A stretch of 63,444 nt of DNA, counting the filler, from Reticulomyxa filosa (lineage: Eukaryota; Protista; Foraminifera): the NCBI GenBank assembly GCA_000512085.1. It is 21 parts of 21 records of this genome, joined end to end, with 100 filler letters (N's around TTAATTAATTAA, not from the genome) between each part and the next. Parts side by side here need not be neighbours in the genome. Positions count along the whole stretch, not along the records: positions 9,866 to 17,738 come from ASPP01037079.1; 20 more parts are not named here. One strand, given 5' to 3'. Shown here piece by piece: positions 9,321 to 17,738 of this stretch. Made by a program: the position numbers and the translations under genes. How positions within the stretch are numbered: the stretch's first letter is position 1; the number at the start of each line of letters is the position of its first letter. The notes under the pieces were generated by a model that saw only the letters and a program-made list of their open reading frames with translations, ran no database searches and was not told the origin of the DNA.

Positions 9321-10077
9321 TAAAATAGAAGATTCATAAGATTATTTTTTGTGTTAAACATTTAATTTTTGAAGTAATTATTGATAATATTGAGTCAATT
9401 TGGAATTATTTTCTTCCAAAGATTTATTATTGTTTTCCTTTATCATTAAAATCTTTTTTTATTATTTTAATATCTGCTTGTGCTACATTTGTATCAAATT
9501 GCATTCATTTACTAAATGATTATTTAAATATTTTAATTTTCCTTTAAAATTGCATTTAATGTACAATTATTCCTTGTTCTTTTTCACCTTGCTGACTTTT
9601 GAGTAGTAAAACTTGTGCAATTCAATTGTTTATTCTTTGTGTCTATTGAAGATTTCAGCTGAATTACTCTGTTACAATAATTGCTTATTCCTTCAATTTT
9701 GTAAAAATAATTTAAAAAGAAAAATAAAGATTTAAACCTAATTTTTTTTAAAAAAATATCTACTANNNNNNNNNNNNNNNNNNNNNNNNNNNNNNNNNNN
9801 NNNNNNNNNTTAATTAATTAANNNNNNNNNNNNNNNNNNNNNNNNNNNNNNNNNNNNNNNNNNNNAATAAACACATTTTATTTTTCCGTTCCACCTAACC
9901 TTTTCTAAATGCTTGATACATTTATTTTGATTTTTGTAAGTGTTGAAGATAGAAAGAATGTCCATAAACGAAGGAATTAATTTGTTAAAATTTCTATCTA
10001 TTATTTAACCTTGCGTTTATTGTGTTGTCAACAATTATTTTCCCTATTAGTGGGACATTGGGAATAATTATTCTAAT

Positions 10078-10620
10078 TTGGATATATTACAGCAAGAAGA
10101 AGCTATAGCTACGCTGACAAAATATTCATTAATAAACTATACAGAAAATCCTGCTAATTATGATATCTATAATTTATCCGAAGAAGTGATTAAAGGATTA
10201 AAATCTACTTTTACTATACATGAAATGACACAATTTGCTGTTCATGACCATTTGAATAAGCAAGATAAAAAATTCCATATTAAAAAGGGACTAAATACAT
10301 TGGTTAAGTTTCTACCTGACAAGATGGACATTTATGTTCCTCTTGCAGAACAAGCTAATTTCCTCATTTCTCACATACAAACCATCACAGATTATGCACA
10401 AAAAGAGGAAGTTTATAGTGATGATTTAATTACTCTTTATGTAAGAGAATTAGAATATTATTTGGCTGGAAAAAGAGTTTTATAAAAAGTAAAGAATTAA
10501 TCAATAGACTGGATGATATTACTTCAAAGGCTTCTGCCAAAAAATTAACTTTATGTAGATTGCATCTTATGAAGGCAGGATATGCTATTGCTCGTAATGC
10601 CTTTGAAATAAGAGGATCTT
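10078..10620 (+). pseudogene. Fragment of a bacterial STAND (NB-ARC)-TPR-like protein, winged-helix region
   Basis: AIATLTKYSLI...FTIHEMTQFAV resembles the L..YSLI / MH.L.Q motifs. After the stop at 10485 a helical frame continues (KELINRLDDI...LHLMKAGY). Confidence 0.5.
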
Positions 10621-11139
10621 AGTTAAATTTGCAACTAAAATAGATAAGTTCCTTTTAGACATAACTAGCGGCTTTACACTGAACATGCTATTTTTCCTTC
10701 ATCAACATTTGCCTTAAGATTTCTTTGTGAAGCAAATTAACAAAGAAAACGTGCCAGCCTATCGATACCAACAAATCAATACATGAGAGAATAAAAGCTT
10801 GCGCATCTTTCTCAGGCCAAATTTTACCAAGAATTAATACGATAAGTATGATAGGTATATACAGCAAGACAACTACTAGATACGTAAAACAATATATCTC
10901 TAAAAAAATAGGCAAATTTCATTCAACTTGCCTATTCTTAAAATCGCAATTAATCACTTCGATTACAACTGCTCTGCTTCTGTTGTCACATTAGGCAGCG
11001 AATGTAATACATCCCCAATAAAAGCAGCTCCATTGATATTAAGAGTTTCATGAAGCTTTGAAGTTTGAAGAACAAAAGAAACATAACGTCTTTTGGTTAA
11101 CTGTCGCACAGGCAGCTTTGAAGTGAAGAAGAATCAATA

Positions 11140-11372
11140 TCAATTAAGTACGGCAGTTAACTTCAAACGGGAATTCTCAAGTTCAAGTGCCTTTAACCGC
11201 TTTGCTTGCGATACTTGCATGCCTCCATATTCTTTACGCCACTTATAATACGTTGCATCTGATATTTGCAATTCCTTACATATCTCTTCAATCTTTTTAC
11301 TTGGCCAAGTAACACTTCTCCTTGCCGTAGTATTCTTATAATTTCTTTACTATTGTGGTTCTTTTTTCCCAC
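11140..11372 (-). mobile_element. IS3-family transposase OrfA remnant (frameshifted; OrfB absent)
   Basis: GTG start after GGAG. VGKKNHNSKEIIRILRQGEVLLGQ / KIEEICKELQISDATYYKWRKEYGGMQVSQAKRLKALELENSRLK is the HTH + leucine zipper of IS3 OrfA. Confidence 0.85.
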
Positions 11373-11434
11373 GATCTTTCTCCATTTGTTATTGATTCCA
11401 GGCTAGCTCTTTTGTTTTATTTTTACTAACCAAG

Positions 11435-11463
11435 TTCTGCATCAATTTTACGGGGCAAGGACA
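11435..11463 (-). mobile_element. Putative IS3 left terminal inverted repeat
   Basis: Minus strand reads TGTCCTTGCCCCGTAAAATTGATGCAG: a TG-initial, CCCC-containing end about 90 bp upstream of orfA, exactly where the upstream HTH ORF loses coherence. Confidence 0.55.
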
Positions 11464-11616
11464 TTTTTTATACCATTCGTAATAGGTGTTTCTGTGAATT
11501 TCAAAAAAGTTACATGAATCCCCTACATGACACATATTATTCATGTAGACTTTAAGAAAATCCTCTCTCGTTGTGTCGGTTTTTGTAATGCCTGGAAGGC
11601 ATTTTACACTTTGCAA
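11464..11616 (-). pseudogene. HTH protein N-terminus (phage terminase-small-subunit or transposase-like) truncated by the IS3 insertion
   Basis: FLKVYMNNMCHVGDSCNFFEIHRNTYYEWYKK has an HTH pattern (V..AC...I.R.TYY.W); the downstream codons are IS sequence. Confidence 0.45.
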
Positions 11617-11804
11617 CTTTCATATTCACACCTACAAGCTGGACAGATTATTTTTTGGATGCTCTTATATTAAGTGCAGAAGAAGCCTATAATATAAGAA
11701 AGTTACTTGATATAACATTGGGCAGATCTCTAACATTGTCACTAGCCCGCTACGCAGATGCATTGAAACAAGTAAACTCATTATAGGTGGATGCAAATTT
11801 AAAA

Positions 11805-11834
11805 ATTTGAAAAATCTATCGTTCAGTTAAGTGT
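11805..11834 (+). repeat. 30-bp inverted repeat, left copy (recombination-site-like)
   Basis: ATTTGAAAAATCTATCGTTCAGTTAAGTGT is 29/30 identical to the reverse complement of 14502-14531. Confidence 0.93.
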
Positions 11835-11893
11835 TGTTACTGGGTTTTAACCGCTATTACGAATCTGACTAAATATGTGTATAATTATTCATT

Positions 11894-11947
11894 ATGGATA
11901 AGTTATATAGTATAGGAGAGGCTGCTAAATATTTAGGAGTTTCGGCT
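11894..11947 (+). pseudogene. MerR-type HTH N-terminal remnant, IS607 TnpA (serine recombinase)-like
   Basis: MDKLYSIGEAAKYLGVS, after which similarity is lost; TATAAT lies just upstream at about 11880. Confidence 0.55.
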
Positions 11948-11972
11948 TATCATCTGATATATAACATTATTC

Positions 11973-12001
11973 TTGACAGCATACACCTATCGGTTTACGT
12001 T
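11973..12001 (+). promoter_or_regulatory. Putative sigma70 promoter of parA
   Basis: TTGACA - 17 bp - TACGTT, 30 bp upstream of ATG 12032; overlapped by an inverted GGTTTAC / GTAAACC pair (11992, 12025). Confidence 0.5.
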
Positions 12002-12031
12002 TCTCTATAAAATTATGACCGATTGTAAACC

Positions 12032-12987
12032 ATGATTCCAAAAATTACTATCACAGATATTGCCACTACGCTCAATATTACTCGACAAGCAGTATTAAAA
12101 AAGCTAAAAACATTAAATATTACCTATAATTTATCCTCTAACAAGAGTTATTTAACCCATTGCTAAGCACGAAGTTTTTTTAATTATAAAAGAAAAAACA
12201 AGTCATCTCCATTCAAATTGTAAAAGGAGGTTCTGGAAAAACTGCTATTGCTCTAAACCTTGCTATAAGAGCCAGTTTATACGGTGAAAAAGTTTTACTA
12301 ATCGATTTAGATCAGCAGGCTAATTTAACTGATGGCTTTAAAAATTTTAAATTAGAAAACAAACTCACATTCTATGATATACTAAAATCAGGGGTTAGTC
12401 CAAAAGATTGTATTTTGAAAATTTTAGATGGCATTGATCTTATACCAAGTAAGATCGATAACGCATTACTAGACGATTTAATGTTATTTGCTAATTCGCC
12501 AATAAATACTGTTTACAAAGATATTATCAATCAAATTAAAGAGGAATATGATTTGATATTAATTGATTACCCTCCCGCTTTAGGCAGGTCTGTTGGGGCT
12601 GCGGCGATGGCGTCAGATTATATAATAGCTCCTGTAACTCCTGACCAGGCTTGCATTAGAGGGTTGGGAATTCTAGATCAACAACTTTCATTGCTGTCAA
12701 AAAAGTACGGTGGCTCCTCAGTTCCTTATAGGATAATTTATAATAAATATGATGGAAGAACGTTACTTTCAAGGAAAATAATCTCAGCTCTATTTGAACA
12801 TGCAAGTTATAAAGATCGTCTTTTTTCTTCTTATATCAGGAGCAATCAAACATTTGCAAATGATTATAGCAAAGGGGTTTCAATATACGATACCGTACAA
12901 AGTAACTCTGCCCAAGAAGATATTGACTTATTAGCAAGAGAAATATTGGACATTCCTTTCATACCAGAAAAGGAAGCTAATTTATAA
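12032..12987 (+). pseudogene. parA: Plasmid-type ParA partition ATPase with N-terminal HTH, disrupted (TAA at 12164, frameshift near 12185)
   Basis: N-terminal HTH MIPKITITDIATTLNITRQAVLKKLK; deviant Walker A KGGSGKT (12223-12243); VLLIDLDQQANLT; Walker B YDLILIDYPP; NKYDGRT. Confidence 0.9.
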
Positions 12988-12999
12988 AACAGGTCTTAT

Positions 13000-14344
13000 A
13001 TGCCAGTTCTCAATAAACTTAATCTACAATTAAAAAAAGACGACGATATAGAAAATATTTGGGATGTATTTGATGCTCATAGTAAAAAGATAGCAAAATC
13101 TCATAAATTTGTAAACAATCTAAGTAACAACTTGGGTAACAACTTGGGTAACAGATTTCTTTCATATACTGGTGGGAAATTTTACTTGTTTTTATGTGAA
13201 AATTTACTTAATAAGCAAAGCTTAATTTCGAAGCAAATTTCATTGGCTGAGTATTGCCGCAACTCTCATACCAGGCTCACTTCATTCAAAATTATCTTAC
13301 GTCGGTTAAAGACGAAAAATATATTAAAAGTTATCGAGTCTAAATCTGGAAATTATGGTTATGTTAAATTTCAACTTGAGAGAGATTTCTACTTAAAATT
13401 CCTTAAAAATTTAACAACTACTAATTACTATAATAATAATATACTTAAGAGGGAGAGAGTGCAGAGAGAGGGAGAAAAAAAAGAAGAAATAAAGCAAGAG
13501 AAGGAAAATGAGATAAAAAATGAACAGTTAAAAAATGATATACAGAAGAGTGAATCAGAAAAAGTGATAAGTTCCTTGATACTTAAATTTGAAGACTTAC
13601 CAGAAGAATGGAAAACGATTAATATCCATTTATTGGAAGAATGGCAGTTTAAAGAGCATCATCTTGTGAGTTTTATACAAACTTAATGTATTACCAGCAA
13701 GCGTTATTAAGGAATCGATAGAACACTTTGCATATGGAATAAAGCATAATAAGGAGAATTATCAAAAGTACAGCGATCCATTGAAGGTATTAATAGGGAG
13801 GTTAAGGAAAGGAGAAGCATGGATAGAATCAAGTTATAGGAGTAAGGAAGAGCTTGCAACATTGGCGTTCATAAGAAGAAAAAAAGAAGAAAAGATTAAA
13901 AGTTTATCTGCATTATGTAATTTGGTTGATACACTAGAGGTAGATAATTACAGGCAATGGTATGCAAAACTAAAAGAAGAAGAAAAAAGGAAAATAAAGC
14001 TGGAATATAGGGATCAAGATTTGTATGAAGGAATTGGAGAAGCTGTCTTTAAGGTGCATTATGTCAAAAAAGTCCTAAAAGAAGAGAGGAGTGCAGAAGA
14101 GATGGCATTGGAGATTTATCTGAGGGAGAAAGAGTTGAGGGATAATGCAGAGGATGAGAGATTAAGAAGCAAGATGGAAGAAGGTGGTTTATTGCAAAAA
14201 TATTACAATTGGCTTAATAGCTTAAGTAAAACAATGATGAGAGAATTGATTGGAGGAGAGAAAATTGAGAATGGCGAAATGACAAAAGAAGGAGATAAGA
14301 AGCTCAAACAATATTATCTTAAACATGAATTAAAAATACTCTAA
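13000..14344 (+). CDS. Putative plasmid replication initiator downstream of parA; one gene split by a +1 T-run frameshift at about 13672
   Basis: ORFs 13000-13686 and 13781-14344 join via LYKLNVLPASVIKESIEHFAYGIKHNKENYQKYSDPLKVLIGRLRKGEAW. There is a winged-helix-like segment (IILRRLKTKNILKVIESKSGNYGYVKFQL), and the gene starts 12 bp after parA. The Rep function is inferred. Confidence 0.55.
13111..13158 (+). repeat. 4 x 12-bp intragenic tandem repeat (iteron-like)
   Basis: GTAAACAATCTA / AGTAACAACTTG / GGTAACAACTTG / GGTAACAGATTT. Confidence 0.75.
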
Positions 14345-14501
14345 GCAAGCAGAGAAAAAACTAAAACAATAAAAATCACCTCTATTCCATGATTCAAATA
14401 CCGTTTAAATTGATTTTGAGGCTCCTTTTAGAGGGAAATGAATGACTCTGGCTTAAACCCCCCCACAACTTCTTTAAAGGTTTGCAATACATATACAAAC
14501 A

Positions 14502-14531
14502 ACACTTAACTGAACGATAGGTTTTTCAAAT
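14502..14531 (-). repeat. 30-bp inverted repeat, right copy
   Basis: ACACTTAACTGAACGATAGGTTTTTCAAAT; its reverse complement matches 11805-11834 at 29/30. Confidence 0.93.
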
Positions 14532-14532
14532 C

Positions 14533-14679
14533 TTGTTCGTTACTATACTTGGTGTGCTAAGTGTGGAGTTAATCTTTGGAATTGCCAGTTTCTTTGGTAT
14601 AGGTGCAAGCGTTATAGGTGTGCTTGCTGGTATACTTTTATTGTATTGGTATTCATCAGACATTAAACGGGACAAATAA
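14533..14679 (+). pseudogene. Small hydrophobic ORF or C-terminal fragment of a membrane protein starting at the right inverted repeat
   Basis: LFVTILGVLSVELIFGIASFFGIGASVIGVLAGILLLYWYSSDIKRDK*. The frame is closed upstream by a TAG inside the repeat, and a hairpin follows the stop. Confidence 0.45.
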
Positions 14680-14692
14680 GAATCTTAAGTAA

Positions 14693-14722
14693 ACAATCCC
14701 CGCTGTTTGCAACGGGGATTGT
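14693..14722. terminator. GC-rich hairpin, probable intrinsic terminator
   Basis: ACAATCCCCG-CTGTTTGCAA-CGGGGATTGT is a perfect 10-bp stem just after the stop at 14679; the U-tract is weak on the plus strand. Confidence 0.55.
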
Positions 14723-14744
14723 AACAACACAAACAATAACATGA

Positions 14745-15101
14745 ATGAAGAGTGAAAAATTCTATGAAGATTTATTAAACTACCCTGTCCCTGTTGATTG
14801 GAGGATTATTAAGTTACTAAGGTACAGCTCTTTTGCGCTCGATATATATTTTTGGCTTACATACAGGATTAGTTATATGATTGAAGAAGTGTATATACCA
14901 TTGAAAAGTCTAATGCATCAGTTTGGCACAGGTTATAAGAATGACTACAGAGGCAGATATGAATTTAAAAGATCTTTTAAATTACAATTAAGAAAAATTA
15001 AAGTAATATGGCAAGCTCTCAATGTAAATATTGATGAAAAAGAGAATAATCTTGTTATAAAACCTTCTTCTAGCCTTATAAAGAGACAACTAAAACTATA
15101 A
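14745..15101 (+). pseudogene. repA: Plasmid replication protein RepA (RepA_C family), C-terminal part only
   Basis: SEKFYEDLLNYPVPVDWRIIKLLRYSSFALDIYFWLTYR...LMHQFGTGY...FKRSFKLQLRKIKVIW matches the PVP.D / ALD.Y.WLTYR / QFG motifs; the N-terminal portion is missing. Confidence 0.85.
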
Positions 15102-15199
15102 ATTAAACGCAATATTTCTAAAAAATAGGCACTTGACTTTACTTAGTCAGTTGAGTAAAAAGTAGCGAAAACTAGGTAACTGAAAAATATAGGTGAAGT

Positions 15200-16213
15200 A
15201 TGGCAAACATTGGTGTTGAAGAAAAGAATGAAAATACAGTAATAAAAGCTGAGGCTACACAAAAAACAGAACGCGAAGCAATGATGAACCCAGAAACTGA
15301 GCCATTAAAGAAAATGAGCGATACACAGCAAGGAAGAGATGATGCAGAGATAAAAAAAATGATAAAAGAAAAAATCACAGCAGTAAAAAAACTTAGGCAT
15401 TCGAAAAAGAAAAGAATGGAATTTCAAGAAGCTGCAAAAATGGTAAAAGAAAAAGAAAGGGCATTTGGAGAAGCTGAAGCAATCGTAAAAGAAAAGGAAA
15501 TGGCAGTAGAAAAAGCTAAAGCAATTGTAAAAGAAAAGTTAACAACAGTAGAGAATTCGCATGTTTTATTGGAAGCCAAAAAAGTAGCATTTCAAGAAGC
15601 TGAAGCACTAGTCAAAGAAAAAGAAATAATAGCAGAAAAAGCTAAAGCAATTGTAAAAGAAAAATTAGTAACAGTAGAAGAAGCAACCAAAATACTGGAA
15701 GCAAGCAAAATAGCACTCAAAGAAGCTGAAAAAGTGGCAACCGAAAAAGAAATAGCAGCAGAGAAGGAAAAAACAAGTGCTGGATTAGAAGAGAAAAAAA
15801 TAACAGTGAAAGAAGCTGCGACATTAACAAAAGAAAAGTTAATAGCAGTAGAAAAAGCTATAATTGTACTGAAAGAAAAAGAAACAGCTGTAGCGGAAGC
15901 AAAAGTTGTAATGAGTAAAAAAGCAACAGCTGTAGCGGAAGCGAAGCTTGCAATGAATGAAAAAGGAACAGCTGTAGCGGAAGCAAATTTAGCAATTGTA
16001 AAAGAAGACGTTAATTCTGTAGTAAAAGCAACGGAGCTAACAGAAGAATTGATTAAAATAACGGGAAAGATTGATGATTTTGTGATAACAGAACAAACGC
16101 CTGTAAATCTAGTAAAAATAAAGGAAAGTATTGATAATTTCGTGGGAGGAAAAGAAGCAACGGAGCTTCTAATGTGGTATAATGGTCAAGAAGAAATGCA
16201 TCAAGACTTATAA
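15200..16213 (+). CDS. Intact 337-aa Ala/Glu/Lys-rich coiled-coil protein built from about 14 x 14-aa repeats
   Basis: AGGTGA RBS upstream; units such as AFGEAEAIVKEKEM, AVEKAKAIVKEKLT, AFQEAEALVKEKEI and AVAEAKVVMSKKAT. Confidence 0.85.
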   Translation: MANIGVEEKNENTVIKAEATQKTEREAMMNPETEPLKKMSDTQQGRDDAEIKKMIKEKITAVKKLRHSKKKRMEFQEAAKMVKEKERAFGEAEAIVKEKEMAVEKAKAIVKEKLTTVENSHVLLEAKKVAFQEAEALVKEKEIIAEKAKAIVKEKLVTVEEATKILEASKIALKEAEKVATEKEIAAEKEKTSAGLEEKKITVKEAATLTKEKLIAVEKAIIVLKEKETAVAEAKVVMSKKATAVAEAKLAMNEKGTAVAEANLAIVKEDVNSVVKATELTEELIKITGKIDDFVITEQTPVNLVKIKESIDNFVGGKEATELLMWYNGQEEMHQDL

Positions 16214-16251
16214 TCTCTCTCTTTGTTTTATATCTATTGAAAATAGAGGTC

Positions 16252-16279
16252 TTGATACTTTAGGAAAGAGTGATACAAT
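16252..16279 (+). promoter_or_regulatory. Putative sigma70 promoter with extended -10
   Basis: TTGATA - 16 bp - TACAAT with TG at the extended position; AAAGGA RBS and ATG at 16326 downstream. Confidence 0.55.
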
Positions 16280-16325
16280 AACAAGAGTAAAAATATAATT
16301 TATAATTTTATAAAAAGGAAAGTGC

Positions 16326-17738
16326 ATGGAAAATTGGGGTCATGAGGAACTTGGTTTTGATATTATAGAAGAAGCTGAGGCTGTGCAAAAAGAGTAAGTG
16401 AAGCATTAAAAAGATTCAAAGCTGTATTAGACTCAGTGGGTAAAACACAAGAAGAAACTAAAATTGCATTAGACTCAGCGACTAAAATGCGAGAAGAAAC
16501 TAAAATTGCACTAGACTCAGTGGATAAAATACTAGAAATGAGTAAGACTAGCCAACAAATTTTGACAGCATTAGAAGCATCTATAGAAAAAAGAATGGAA
16601 GCGTATCAAATTCATTTGGATGAAGGAGATGATGATCATAATATTACTCTTGCTCCTTCACTAGAGCAACCAGCTAGCTTATGGAATGAGGCACCGAATC
16701 CTCTGGAAATAAAATCAGCGGCCAGCTTACCATCAGACGAGCCAGTAAAGCTAGAAAGCGTATGGCGTTATAATATAAAACCATTTGAAAGTTCAGCTTC
16801 ATTTGAAGAAAAAAACTTGGATACTAGTGGACAAGATTCATTCTTTATACAAGCATATATTCCTAGTACAGAAGATATAAAGGGTTCGTTTAATTGGGCA
16901 TTGGTGGATTGCAAACAGCTTATACTACTTTCCACGATAGCAAGGCTTTTATACCTGTGAGTTCTGCTGTGTCTGGAGGATTAATAGCAGGTCTTCCTGG
17001 AGCAATTGTTACAGGCTTGGCAGGAGTGGCAGATGAAATAGCTATGTCGTATGGCTATACTAGTAAAGCATATATTGCCCCTACAGTTTTAAGTACAATG
17101 AGTGCATACAAAGCGGTTACGAAGCTATCGTCATTTTTATCAGGAAAAATTGAGCAAATAAACAAAGTAGCAGGTGACATAACCCAATATAAAATTGATG
17201 CAGCTATTGCTAATGATAAGGATTACCAATTTATGGCAGATTATCATGACGGGTATGGGAAATTAATTGAAGAAGTTAAAGGAGAAGAAGGGCTTTTGAA
17301 GTTTGCTGAGAATCTAGCGAAAGTAGCTAGAGAAGATGGGGATACAGCAGGTTTGAAAGAGGCTACTACTGCTATTGCATATGCTGAAGAGCAACTAAGT
17401 AAAAGGGCTCCATGGATTTATGAAAACAGATTCGAAGAGTCTGCAAAGAAAATGGAAGCTATTAAGAGTGGTTATGTTGAACAGCATGATGTAAGTGCGA
17501 ATGTTGGGTTGGCTGCAGCAAGGCTATTTGGTTTTGACGAACAGTATGCCGATACGTTTTTAAAAGTATACAACGTGGCTTCTAAGGTTTCTAATGGGAT
17601 AGGAGTATTGGATACAGTACTTAATTTCAATACCGAAAATGTATTAAGTGCAATTCCAGCTATATATACGGTAGGGAATGCTATTATGTCGTTTGCAACA
17701 GCTGCTCCAGTTGTATATGAAGAAATATACACTACTGC
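16326..17738 (+). CDS. Large bacterial hypothetical protein (frameshifts near 16390 and 16890; 3' truncated) with coiled-coil repeats and a Gly/Ala-rich hydrophobic segment
   Basis: MENWGHEELG... joins ORFs 16436-16960 and 16894 onward; contains SAVSGGLIAGLPGAIVTGLAGVADE. Confidence 0.65.
16427..16537 (+). repeat. 42-bp coding tandem repeat, about 2.6 copies (LDS..K..EETKIA)
   Basis: TTAGACTCAG...GAAGAAACTAAAATTGCA units start at 16427, 16469 and 16511. Confidence 0.9.

What the first reader, a model, noticed from the sequence alone, without database searches (positions are those of the whole stretch)
11805..14531. parA-rep plasmid module bracketed by inverted, serine-recombinase-like 30-bp sites (candidate invertible or swappable replicon cassette)
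Seen: a 29/30-identical inverted repeat (11805-11834 and 14502-14531) encloses the parA promoter, parA and the rep-like gene (2.7 kb). A hydrophobic reading frame begins exactly at the outer edge of the right copy, as if cut there. Known: Hin/Gin/Cin crossover sites are 12+2+12 bp, with arms like TTATCAAAAACC. Here ATTTGAAAAACC-TA-TCGTTCAGTTAA matches 9/12 in one arm and 6/12 in the other. Inference: the replication/partition module is or was flipped or inserted as a unit by a site-specific recombinase, next to a second, truncated repA, which suggests replicon replacement. No intact recombinase gene is on the contig. The inner CG.TCAGTTAAG also resembles IS4-type ends, so a composite transposable unit is an alternative.
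Basis: partly seen in the sequence, partly recalled or inferred. Interest (0 to 1): 0.8.

Follow-up and report, generated by a model that had tools for sequence, protein, structure and literature searches.

The report
Inverted repeat around decayed plasmid module
A real 37-base inverted repeat brackets a broken plasmid partition/replication gene pair in DNA of a bacterial symbiont of the foraminifer Reticulomyxa; it is not a Hin-type inversion site and looks most like the leftover ends of a dead mobile cassette, though this could not be proven.

Summary
The repeat is real and longer than reported: 11802-11838 and 14498-14534, 35 of 37 bases, far above chance (60 bits against a simulated maximum of 44). 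It is sharply bounded, with no similarity beyond either end.

The piece is a whole 7873-base contig of the Reticulomyxa filosa assembly. Its relatives are Midichloriaceae (Rickettsiales) plasmids and genomes.

The arms enclose a truncated HTH fragment, a parA with a stop codon and a frameshift, and a winged-helix "rep-like" gene with a frameshift. The flanks hold IS3 debris and a 5'-truncated repA.

The Hin/Gin/Cin reading fails. The proposed half-sites share 3 of 12 positions with each other. The match to the hix arm is at background level (13 equally good 12-mers in the piece). No recombinase gene is present.

The core sequence is absent from every collection I could search. It is also absent from about 90 kb of related parA-X loci, none of which has a flanking repeat.

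My best guess (0.38) is that these are relic terminal repeats of a non-autonomous mobile cassette, with a possible 6-base target duplication. Rivals remain open: an unrelated dispersed repeat, plasmid cis-sites, and inversion sites. Interest is low to moderate.

The parts
11802..11838 (.). Left arm of the 37-nt inverted repeat
   Evidence: 35/37 with the right arm. It has no internal dyad and no hairpin.
14498..14534 (.). Right arm of the 37-nt inverted repeat
11857..11885 (+). Putative promoter of the module: a perfect TATAAT at 11880-11885 and a weak -35 (TTACGA) 17 nt upstream
   Evidence: Read directly. The consensus scan did not list it because the -35 is only 3/6. This is inference only.
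11894..12010 (+). Truncated 38-codon HTH (excisionase/MerR/HTH_17-like) reading frame
   Evidence: TIGR01764, E 0.004; HTH_17, E 0.013. The matches are weak and cover only the first 15-17 residues.
12032..12987 (+). parA pseudogene: N-terminal HTH at 12032-12163, TAA stop at 12164-12166, frame change before 12190, Walker ATPase frame at 12190-12987
   Evidence: The ATPase frame is 70% identical to the intact 321-aa P0002. There is no start codon between 12190 and 12415.
13000..14344 (+). Rep-like gene 'X': winged-helix N-terminal domain plus a conserved helical domain. It is split by a +1 frameshift (extra T) near 13665-13672.
13124..13153 (+). Perfect 12-nt tandem repeat (2.5 copies) in the 5' part of X, resembling iterons or a centromere
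14535..14679 (+). Small hydrophobic reading frame (46 codons from the TTG at 14535) starting at the outer edge of the right arm. No family match.
14693..14722 (+). Strong stem-loop after the hydrophobic frame (-17.9 kcal/mol, z -4.9), with no T-tail
14745..15101 (+). Internal fragment of a RepA-type initiator (PF04796). It corresponds to residues 175-283 of the 480-aa RepA of the Rickettsiales bacterium Ac37b plasmid. The 5' part is missing from the contig.
11171..11412 (-). IS3-family remnant (upstream leader and OrfA, HTH_Tnp_1). Its end lies near 11412-11440, so it does not own the left arm.
   Evidence: E 1.2e-14; 83% DNA identity to L017
11392..11619 (-). Second, weak homeodomain-like HTH remnant of transposase or resolvase type, between the IS3 remnant and the left arm
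   Evidence: (HTH_Tnp_1, E 0.07). These are leads only.

Best explanation
The two 37-nt copies are most likely the surviving terminal inverted repeats of a non-autonomous, transposon-like cassette. Such a cassette has IS-type ends around cargo and no transposase of its own. It once carried or delimited a plasmid maintenance module. The module consists of an HTH-ParA and a winged-helix, initiator-like protein X that has iteron-like repeats inside its own gene. The cassette landed in mobile-DNA-rich plasmid or genomic DNA of the Midichloriaceae symbiont of Reticulomyxa filosa, next to an older RepA-type replicon that is now truncated. The unit is dead today: parA and X are broken and no transposase or recombinase is nearby.

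Shown: the repeat, its sharp edges, its lack of internal symmetry, the decay of the cargo, the mobile-element debris in the flanks, and the absence of the repeat from relatives of the module.

Inferred: that the arms were ends recognised by a transposase supplied in trans, and that the module moved as one unit.
For: - The repeat is non-random and sharply bounded.
- Each arm is asymmetric and unstructured, as transposon ends are and as crossover sites of invertases or Xer recombinases are not.
- At 30-37 nt the arms are in the usual range for IS and transposon terminal repeats (my own knowledge).
- Setting the ends at 11809 and 14527 leaves a 29/30 repeat flanked by AAATTT on the left and AAATCT on the right. 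This could be a 6-bp target duplication, 5/6.
- The arms enclose a complete functional block and nothing else: candidate promoter, parA and X.
- The flanks are a graveyard of mobile DNA: an IS3 remnant, a second HTH remnant and a truncated repA.
- Related parA-X modules carry no such repeat, so it is an add-on and not part of the par/rep machinery. This covers the Bandiella plasmid L005, the marine loci L007-L014, and L016 and L019.
- The parA-X pair does travel as a discrete two-gene unit. It sits alone among housekeeping genes in L019. X alone lies at the end of contig L015, beside housekeeping genes. The pair lies next to F-type tra genes in a 1.46-Mb contig (L016) and on a plasmid in Bandiella.
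Against: - No transposase lies between the arms or intact anywhere on the contig.
- The candidate target duplication is a palindromic hexamer with one mismatch, so it can equally be read as the outer part of the repeat.
- Removing the unit restores no reading frame.
- No other copy of the arm exists in genome contigs, metagenome contigs, viral contigs or PLSDB, so no donor IS family can be named.
- The rest of the R. filosa assembly and ISfinder could not be searched.
- Cassettes of this kind that carry replicon genes are not something I know to be described.
Confidence: 0.38

Rival explanations
1. The two arms are independent copies of a short dispersed repeat of this symbiont genome, such as solo IS ends or MITE stumps. 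They happen to lie in opposite orientation on either side of the module and have no functional tie to it.
For: The contig is full of mobile-element debris. A weak transposase/resolvase-type HTH remnant lies on the minus strand 185-200 nt left of the left arm, about where the first gene of an IS ending at the arm would sit. There is no clear target duplication.
Against: No third copy occurs in the 7.9-kb contig, in the other fetched R. filosa contig L001, or in any collection. Similarity does not run outward from either arm, as it would for two copies of the same IS end region. Nothing transposase-like lies right of the right arm.
Confidence: 0.2
2. The arms are cis-acting plasmid sites, either centromere/operator or origin-associated, bound by the HTH of ParA or by the winged helix of X. 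They would sit at both ends of the operon.
For: The left arm ends 18 nt upstream of the candidate -35, and the right arm lies 150 nt after the X stop codon. The 8-mer GTAACAAC is the core of the tandem repeat inside X. It occurs four times in the piece against 0.165 expected. One of those copies, in inverted orientation, spans the inner edge of the left arm and the two bases beyond it (11833-11840). Both arms carry AACAACAC at their inner ends.
Against: The right arm lacks the GT of the core. Each arm is a single, asymmetric 37-mer with no internal repeat or dyad. In relatives with much larger intragenic arrays, no isolated unit lies upstream of parA or downstream of X. No relative has a flanking repeat. 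After allowing for post hoc choice of the k-mer, the significance is marginal.
Confidence: 0.15
3. This is the reader's idea: the arms are crossover sites of a site-specific recombinase (serine or tyrosine, supplied in trans) that inverts or exchanges the 2.7-kb replicon cassette.
For: Inverted repeats of 20-40 bp around 1-4-kb segments are the anatomy of invertible segments (my own knowledge: the Mu G segment is about 3 kb with 34-bp repeats). Master invertases can act in trans. Related Rickettsiales plasmids encode recombinases near their par genes: a Hin-like invertase/resolvase next to parA-repA on the Ac37b plasmid, and a tyrosine recombinase 2 kb from parA on the Bandiella plasmid.
Against: There is no dyad symmetry in the proposed 12+2+12 site (3/12), and the best alternative register is only 7/11. 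The hix resemblance is at background level. No recombinase catalytic domain is on the contig, even by tblastn with the Ac37b Hin-like protein. Flipping a self-contained parA-X operon with its own promoter would change nothing obvious. Both genes are pseudogenes. The arms differ at two positions, one of them next to the proposed crossover.
Confidence: 0.12
4. The repeat is a chance match or an assembly artefact.
For: The contig comes from an old, fragmented eukaryote assembly. The frameshifts sit in homopolymer runs, which hints at some sequencing error.
Against: The repeat scores 60 bits against a simulated maximum of 44. A 37-nt repeat is shorter than a read and would not be created by misassembly. 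The parA stop codon is a substitution, not a homopolymer error.
Confidence: 0.03

Closest known systems
Mobile insertion cassettes and other non-autonomous IS-end-bounded units, such as MIC231 of Bacillus cereus (from my own knowledge, not checked here)
   Same: Cargo genes sit between two short terminal inverted repeats with no transposase inside. The edges are sharp and the ends are asymmetric.
   Different: The cargo here is a partition/replication module. The donor IS family is unknown, the target duplication is ambiguous, and only one copy is known.
Hin/Gin/Cin invertible segments (Salmonella H segment, Mu G segment, P1 C segment)
   Same: The scale is similar: a segment of about 3 kb between short inverted repeats.
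   Different: The sites lack the dyad-symmetric 12-2-12 structure. The consensus match is at chance level. There is no adjacent invertase gene and no gene whose expression would switch.
pdif modules of Acinetobacter plasmids: cargo between inverted XerC/XerD sites, recombinase encoded elsewhere (from my own knowledge)
   Same: This is the idea of a swappable plasmid module bracketed by inverted recombination sites, with no recombinase on the element.
   Different: The arms contain no 11-6-11 dif-like site. There is no CATAA / TTATG inner palindrome, and the dyad score with a 6-nt spacer is not above other registers.
Composite, IS-bounded replicon modules in multireplicon plasmids
   Same: A replicon module is delimited by inverted mobile-element sequences next to a second, inactivated replicon.
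   Different: Only 37-nt stumps remain, with no IS bodies. Similarity does not extend outward.
Type Ia ParA (P1/F-like, with an N-terminal HTH), and initiators with iterons inside their own gene such as RepA_N-type replicons (the latter from my own knowledge)
   Same: ParA homologs of about 320 aa carry an N-terminal HTH. X has a winged helix and perfect tandem repeats inside its own coding region.
   Different: X matches no Pfam, NCBIfam or PDB family beyond a generic winged helix. Whether it is Rep or a centromere-binding protein is untested.

Membership tests
Hin/Gin/Cin (serine invertase) crossover sites | A 26-bp site made of two dyad-symmetric 12-bp half-sites around a 2-bp core | tested here: not met
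The best register anywhere in the arm is 7/11. There is no self-fold.
Hin/Gin/Cin (serine invertase) crossover sites | A match to the hix half-site consensus that stands above background | tested here: not met
   Thirteen 12-mers in the piece reach 9/12. The site's full-site score of 14-15/24 is equalled or beaten elsewhere (16/24 at 12396).
Hin/Gin/Cin (serine invertase) crossover sites | An invertase gene next to the segment | tested here: not met
   No resolvase catalytic domain was found by Pfam or by tblastn with the Ac37b Hin-like protein. Only HTH-level matches appeared. The contig is only 7.9 kb, so a gene beyond its ends is not excluded.
Hin/Gin/Cin (serine invertase) crossover sites | Both orientations present in the population | not testable with these tools
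Xer/dif-type module sites (pdif) | An 11-6-11 site with an inner palindrome (CATAA ... TTATG) | tested here: not met
   Neither pentamer is in the arms (sequence). No 6-nt-spacer register stands out in the dyad scan.
IS/transposon bounded by terminal inverted repeats | A pair of sharp terminal inverted repeats | tested here: met
   The arms are 35/37 with no similarity beyond them.
IS/transposon bounded by terminal inverted repeats | A direct target-site duplication | tested here: inconclusive
   The only candidate is AAATTT / AAATCT (5/6) with ends at 11809/14527. It is palindromic, so it may be part of the repeat itself.
IS/transposon bounded by terminal inverted repeats | A transposase between the ends, or supplied by related copies | tested here: not met
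   No transposase lies between the arms. The neighbouring IS3 remnant ends near 11412-11440 and is not the owner.
IS/transposon bounded by terminal inverted repeats | Further copies of the ends elsewhere | tested here: inconclusive
   There were no hits in genome contigs, metagenome contigs or viral contigs, and only chance-level hits in PLSDB. There were also none in 90 kb of related loci. The source assembly itself and ISfinder could not be searched.
Tn3-family transposon ends | A repeat of about 38 bp that starts with GGGG and ends with TAAG | tested here: not met
   TAAG is present at 11828-11831. The 38 bp ending there start with unrelated, non-G sequence that differs between the arms, and the similarity runs 7 nt past TAAG. 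The consensus is recalled from memory.
ParA, type Ia-like (HTH plus Walker ATPase) | An N-terminal HTH followed by a deviant Walker A ATPase in one open frame | tested here: not met
   Both domains are present and 63-70% identical to the intact P0002. They are separated by a stop codon and a frame change, so this is a pseudogene.
RepA (PF04796) replicon, right flank | A full-length initiator | tested here: not met
   Only residues 175-283 of a 480-aa homolog are present.
Replication initiator role for gene X | Homology to a known Rep family, or origin activity | tested here: inconclusive
   The N-terminus is a generic winged helix (Z about 8 to the MarR/ArsR and AspA types). Sporadic weak hits of family members to Phage_rep_O, RepL and HTH_36 were seen. 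X is the only candidate initiator on the complete Bandiella plasmid. However, it always sits in the parB position directly after parA.

The most novel reading that the evidence does not exclude
The 37-nt arms mark a so far undescribed kind of portable minimal replicon in Rickettsiales. This would be a parA plus initiator unit, with its origin-like repeats inside the initiator gene, moved or flipped as a cassette between plasmids and chromosomes. The enzyme acting on the arms would be encoded elsewhere in the symbiont genome. It would be the replicon counterpart of pdif modules or mobile insertion cassettes.
Probability: 0.08. Interest if true: 0.65.

Novelty: new member of a known kind. Interest (0 to 1): 0.27.

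Why it matters
If the arms really are ends or sites that move a whole partition/replication module, they would explain how replicon modules are shuffled among the plasmids and integrated elements of obligate intracellular Rickettsiales. In those bacteria, plasmid exchange is otherwise hard to account for. As it stands, this is a single decayed instance with no second copy, so its value is mainly as a pointer. The better-supported and more reusable result is a by-product. Gene X belongs to an unannotated family with about 700 representative clusters. It always follows an HTH-ParA and carries phased, perfect tandem repeats inside its own 5' coding region.

Tried and rejected
- Hin/hix reading: rejected, because there is no dyad and the match is at background level.
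- dif/pdif reading: rejected by inspection and by the dyad scan.
- Tn3-type ends: rejected, because there is no GGGG terminus.
- Left arm as the end of the neighbouring IS3 remnant: rejected, because IS3 homology stops at 11412.
- Module inserted into a gene: no reading frame is restored by excision at four alternative boundaries.
- Missing 5' part of repA elsewhere on the contig: not found.
- Extended or gapped similarity beyond the arms: none.
- Exact-pattern scans of genome contigs, metagenome contigs and viral contigs: no hit.
- blastn of the arm against PLSDB: only chance-level hits, E 0.5 or worse.
- Whole piece against plasmids (megablast) and phages: no match.
- Flanking repeats in related modules: none in the Bandiella plasmid, the marine loci, L016 or L019.
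- Fuzzy search for the arm in 90 kb of related loci: nothing.
- Rfam: nothing at the arms.
- Contig circularity: no terminal overlap.
- Search for other R. filosa symbiont contigs through IS3 OrfA homologs and X-family fragments: none came from that assembly.
- tblastn of the HTH remnant against plasmids: no match.
- The look-up of sequencing runs and the search of earlier findings: not available.
Full report
**Provenance**

The piece 9866-17738 is the whole of contig ASPP01037079.1 (7873 bp) of the Reticulomyxa filosa assembly GCA_000512085.1. Its genes are bacterial.

The nearest relatives of the rep-like gene are all linked to Midichloriaceae or to the same assembly:
- a Midichloriaceae MAG (L002) and Candidatus Anadelfobacter;
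- a plasmid of Candidatus Bandiella woodruffii;
- a second R. filosa contig, L001.

A Midichloriaceae symbiont of R. filosa has been described from the same sequencing data (PMC10847448). The contig is therefore most likely symbiont DNA, either plasmid or chromosome. A nuclear insertion of symbiont DNA is not excluded. The contig has 33% G+C, shows no compositional break at the repeat, and has no terminal overlap that would indicate a circle.

**The observation**

The inverted repeat is real and longer than reported. The arms are 11802-11838 and 14498-14534, with 35 of 37 positions matching.

Several controls show it is not chance:
- It is the best inverted match in the piece by far: 60 bits against 29.6 +/- 3.2 (maximum 44.1) in 200 simulated sequences.
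- A 31-mer pattern with up to three mismatches hits only these two places, and none in shuffles.
- The edges are sharp. The 400 nt outside and the 400 nt inside the arms align no better than shuffled controls.

**What lies between the arms**

1. A candidate promoter with a perfect TATAAT at 11880-11885 and a weak -35. I read it. The consensus scan did not list it.
2. A 38-codon stump of an excisionase/MerR-type HTH frame at 11894-12010. The matches are weak.
3. parA. An intact relative (P0002, 321 aa, 70% identical, from marine metagenomes) shows the gene starts at 12032 with an N-terminal HTH. The window copy then has a TAA stop at 12164-12166. It must also change frame before the ATPase frame that opens at 12190. 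No start codon precedes the Walker A motif in that frame. The stop is a substitution, so parA is a true pseudogene.
4. Gene X at 13000-14344. Intact homologs (P0001, P0126, L002) read straight through where the window has one extra T in a T-run near 13665-13672. This lesion could be real or a homopolymer sequencing error.

**The flanks**

Left of the left arm:
- an IS3-family leader plus OrfA remnant at 11171-11412 on the minus strand (Pfam E 1.2e-14; 83% DNA identity to L017);
- a second, weak homeodomain-type HTH remnant at 11392-11619.

The IS3 homology stops at 11412, so the left arm is not the end of that IS.

Right of the right arm:
- a 46-codon hydrophobic frame that starts (TTG, 14535) at the first base after the arm;
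- a strong stem-loop at 14693-14722;
- an internal fragment of a RepA-type initiator at 14745-15101. It equals residues 175-283 of the 480-aa RepA of the Ac37b plasmid. The missing 5' part is not elsewhere on the contig.

**Test of the serine-recombinase reading**

- The two proposed half-sites match each other at only 3/12, whereas invertase sites are dyad-symmetric. The best dyad in any register is 7/11, and neither arm folds on itself.
- Thirteen 12-mers in this AT-rich 7.9 kb reach 9/12 against the hix arm. The full 26-bp score of the site (14-15 of 24) is equalled or beaten elsewhere, for example 16/24 at 12396.
- No recombinase catalytic domain is detectable, even with the Hin-like protein of the related Ac37b plasmid as a tblastn query. 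Only HTH-level matches appear.

A dif-like 11-6-11 site, as in pdif modules, is also absent. So is a Tn3-type end: TAAG is present but there is no GGGG terminus, and the similarity runs past TAAG.

Flipping a self-contained operon that carries its own promoter would have no obvious effect. The cargo is also broken, so an actively used switch is unlikely.

**Is the repeat part of the par/rep machinery?**

Related parA-X modules were fetched from several contexts:
- the Bandiella plasmid (L005);
- marine metagenome contigs (L007-L014);
- a 1.46-Mb contig where the pair lies next to F-type tra genes (L016);
- L019, where the pair stands alone among housekeeping genes, and L015, where X alone lies at the contig end beside housekeeping genes.

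None of the modules has a comparable flanking repeat. No arm-like sequence occurs in about 90 kb of these loci.

The core of the arm is also absent from genome contigs, metagenome contigs and viral contigs. PLSDB gives only chance-level hits. The repeat is therefore an add-on specific to this contig.

There is one hint the other way. GTAACAAC, the core of the tandem repeat inside X, occurs four times in the piece against 0.165 expected. One copy, in inverted orientation, spans the inner edge of the left arm and the two bases beyond it (11833-11840). Another lies at 14721, just after the stem-loop.

This hint is weak. The right arm lacks the GT of the core. Relatives show no isolated units outside their arrays. 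The k-mer was chosen after the fact.

**Best explanation**

A sharply bounded, asymmetric 30-37-nt repeat pair around 2.7 kb is the anatomy of transposon ends.

With the ends set at 11809 and 14527, the arms are 29/30 and are flanked by AAATTT and AAATCT. This could be a 6-bp target duplication. Because the hexamer is palindromic, it could equally be the outer part of the repeat.

Other points that fit this reading are the mobile-element debris on the left, the inactivated older replicon on the right, and the fact that parA-X occurs elsewhere as a discrete two-gene unit. I therefore rate 'relic ends of a non-autonomous mobile cassette carrying the maintenance module' as most likely, at 0.38.

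The rivals are:
- unrelated copies of a dispersed short repeat (0.20);
- plasmid cis-sites (0.15);
- recombinase inversion sites (0.12);
- artefact or chance (0.03).

Excising the unit restores no reading frame, and no donor IS family can be named. The assignment therefore stays provisional.

**What gene X is**

The family has 689 representative clusters at E <= 0.001 and no Pfam or NCBIfam model. A high-confidence model (pLDDT 86) shows an N-terminal winged helix, a disordered linker and a helical domain. Only the winged helix finds structural neighbours. These are of the MarR/ArsR type, plus the AspA centromere-binding protein, all at about Z 8.

X always follows parA directly, which is the parB position. 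Yet it is the only candidate initiator on the complete 72.6-kb Bandiella plasmid, which has no annotated rep gene. 'Rep-like' is plausible but untested.

**Verdict**

The mechanistic interpretation as a Hin-type or swappable site is not supported. The bracketed module is a decaying partition/replication cassette. The repeat is most simply a relic of mobile-element ends. Interest is low to moderate.

Noticed in passing
window 13124-13153; L005 5138-5472; L008 4130-4272; L009 1399-1423; L019 6523-6621; L015 203-240: In 6 of 8 X genes examined, a perfect (100%) tandem DNA repeat lies 95-430 nt into the coding region. In the four loci other than the window and L015, the units are lineage-specific but share a GGTAC(A) core; the window has GGTAAC(A), and L015 has no such core. 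Where it is present, the core is phased at 11-12 and 21-22 nt, one or two helical turns. There are 20 cores in the Bandiella plasmid. L008 has 8 and L009 has 3 although their ParA proteins are identical, so copy number varies. L002 lacks the array and the N-terminal extension that holds it. This looks like iterons or a centromere embedded in the gene.
   Followed up: partly
window 11831-11840 (-) and 14721-14730 (+); also 14498-14505: The 10-mer GTAACAACAC occurs twice, in opposite orientation. One copy spans the inner edge of the left arm and the two bases beyond it. The other is just after the stem-loop, 15 nt before the truncated repA. AACAACAC also forms the inner end of the right arm. All three junctions between blocks therefore carry this motif. 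After allowing for post hoc selection, the significance is weak.
   Followed up: partly
window 11096-11123, with 11036-11063 and 10976-11003: A 28-nt match to the type I-F CRISPR repeat family CRISPR-DR4 scores 34.4 bits (gathering score 35, E 7e-5). Decayed copies sit exactly 60 and 120 nt upstream (15/28 and 12/28 identical). This may be a remnant of a short CRISPR array abutting the truncated IS3 remnant.
   Followed up: partly
L019 5331-7769; L015 16-1362; L016 5020-7416: The parA-X pair is not confined to plasmids. It stands alone among housekeeping genes in a TARA contig (L019). It lies next to F-type conjugation genes (TraE, TraK, TraB, TraC) in a 1.46-Mb contig (L016). In L015, X alone starts at the contig end and is followed by housekeeping genes, so whether parA precedes it is unknown.
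   Followed up: no
L018 (Rickettsiales bacterium Ac37b plasmid 1) 398-3918: The closest full-length relative of the truncated repA sits in a block made of a Hin-like serine recombinase, then divergently a short ParA, a 111-aa protein and RepA. Recombinase genes do neighbour par/rep modules in related plasmids.
   Followed up: no
window 15200-16213 and 16331-17738: A 337-aa protein is built from 14-residue (42-nt) coiled-coil-like repeats. It is followed by a gene with three more 42-nt repeats that is interrupted: a stop after 16397 and overlapping frames near 16894-16960. This second gene runs off the contig end. Neither has a family match.
   Followed up: no
L008 4730-4879 and 5407-5556: A 150-nt, 96% inverted repeat joins the 3' part of the X gene to the end of this metagenome contig. 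It may be a fold-back assembly artefact or a real inverted duplication.
   Followed up: no
L008 4865-5095 (X protein residues 281-357): The C-terminus of the marine X homolog matches the C-terminal HTH region of the Mpi master DNA invertase model (NF009949, E 5e-9). It has no catalytic domain. The window's X lacks this tail.
   Followed up: no
window 14693-14722: A stable stem-loop of 10 consecutive base pairs plus 2 more beyond a small internal loop (-17.9 kcal/mol, z -4.9) lies after the small hydrophobic frame. It has no T-tail, so it is not a canonical intrinsic terminator.
   Followed up: partly
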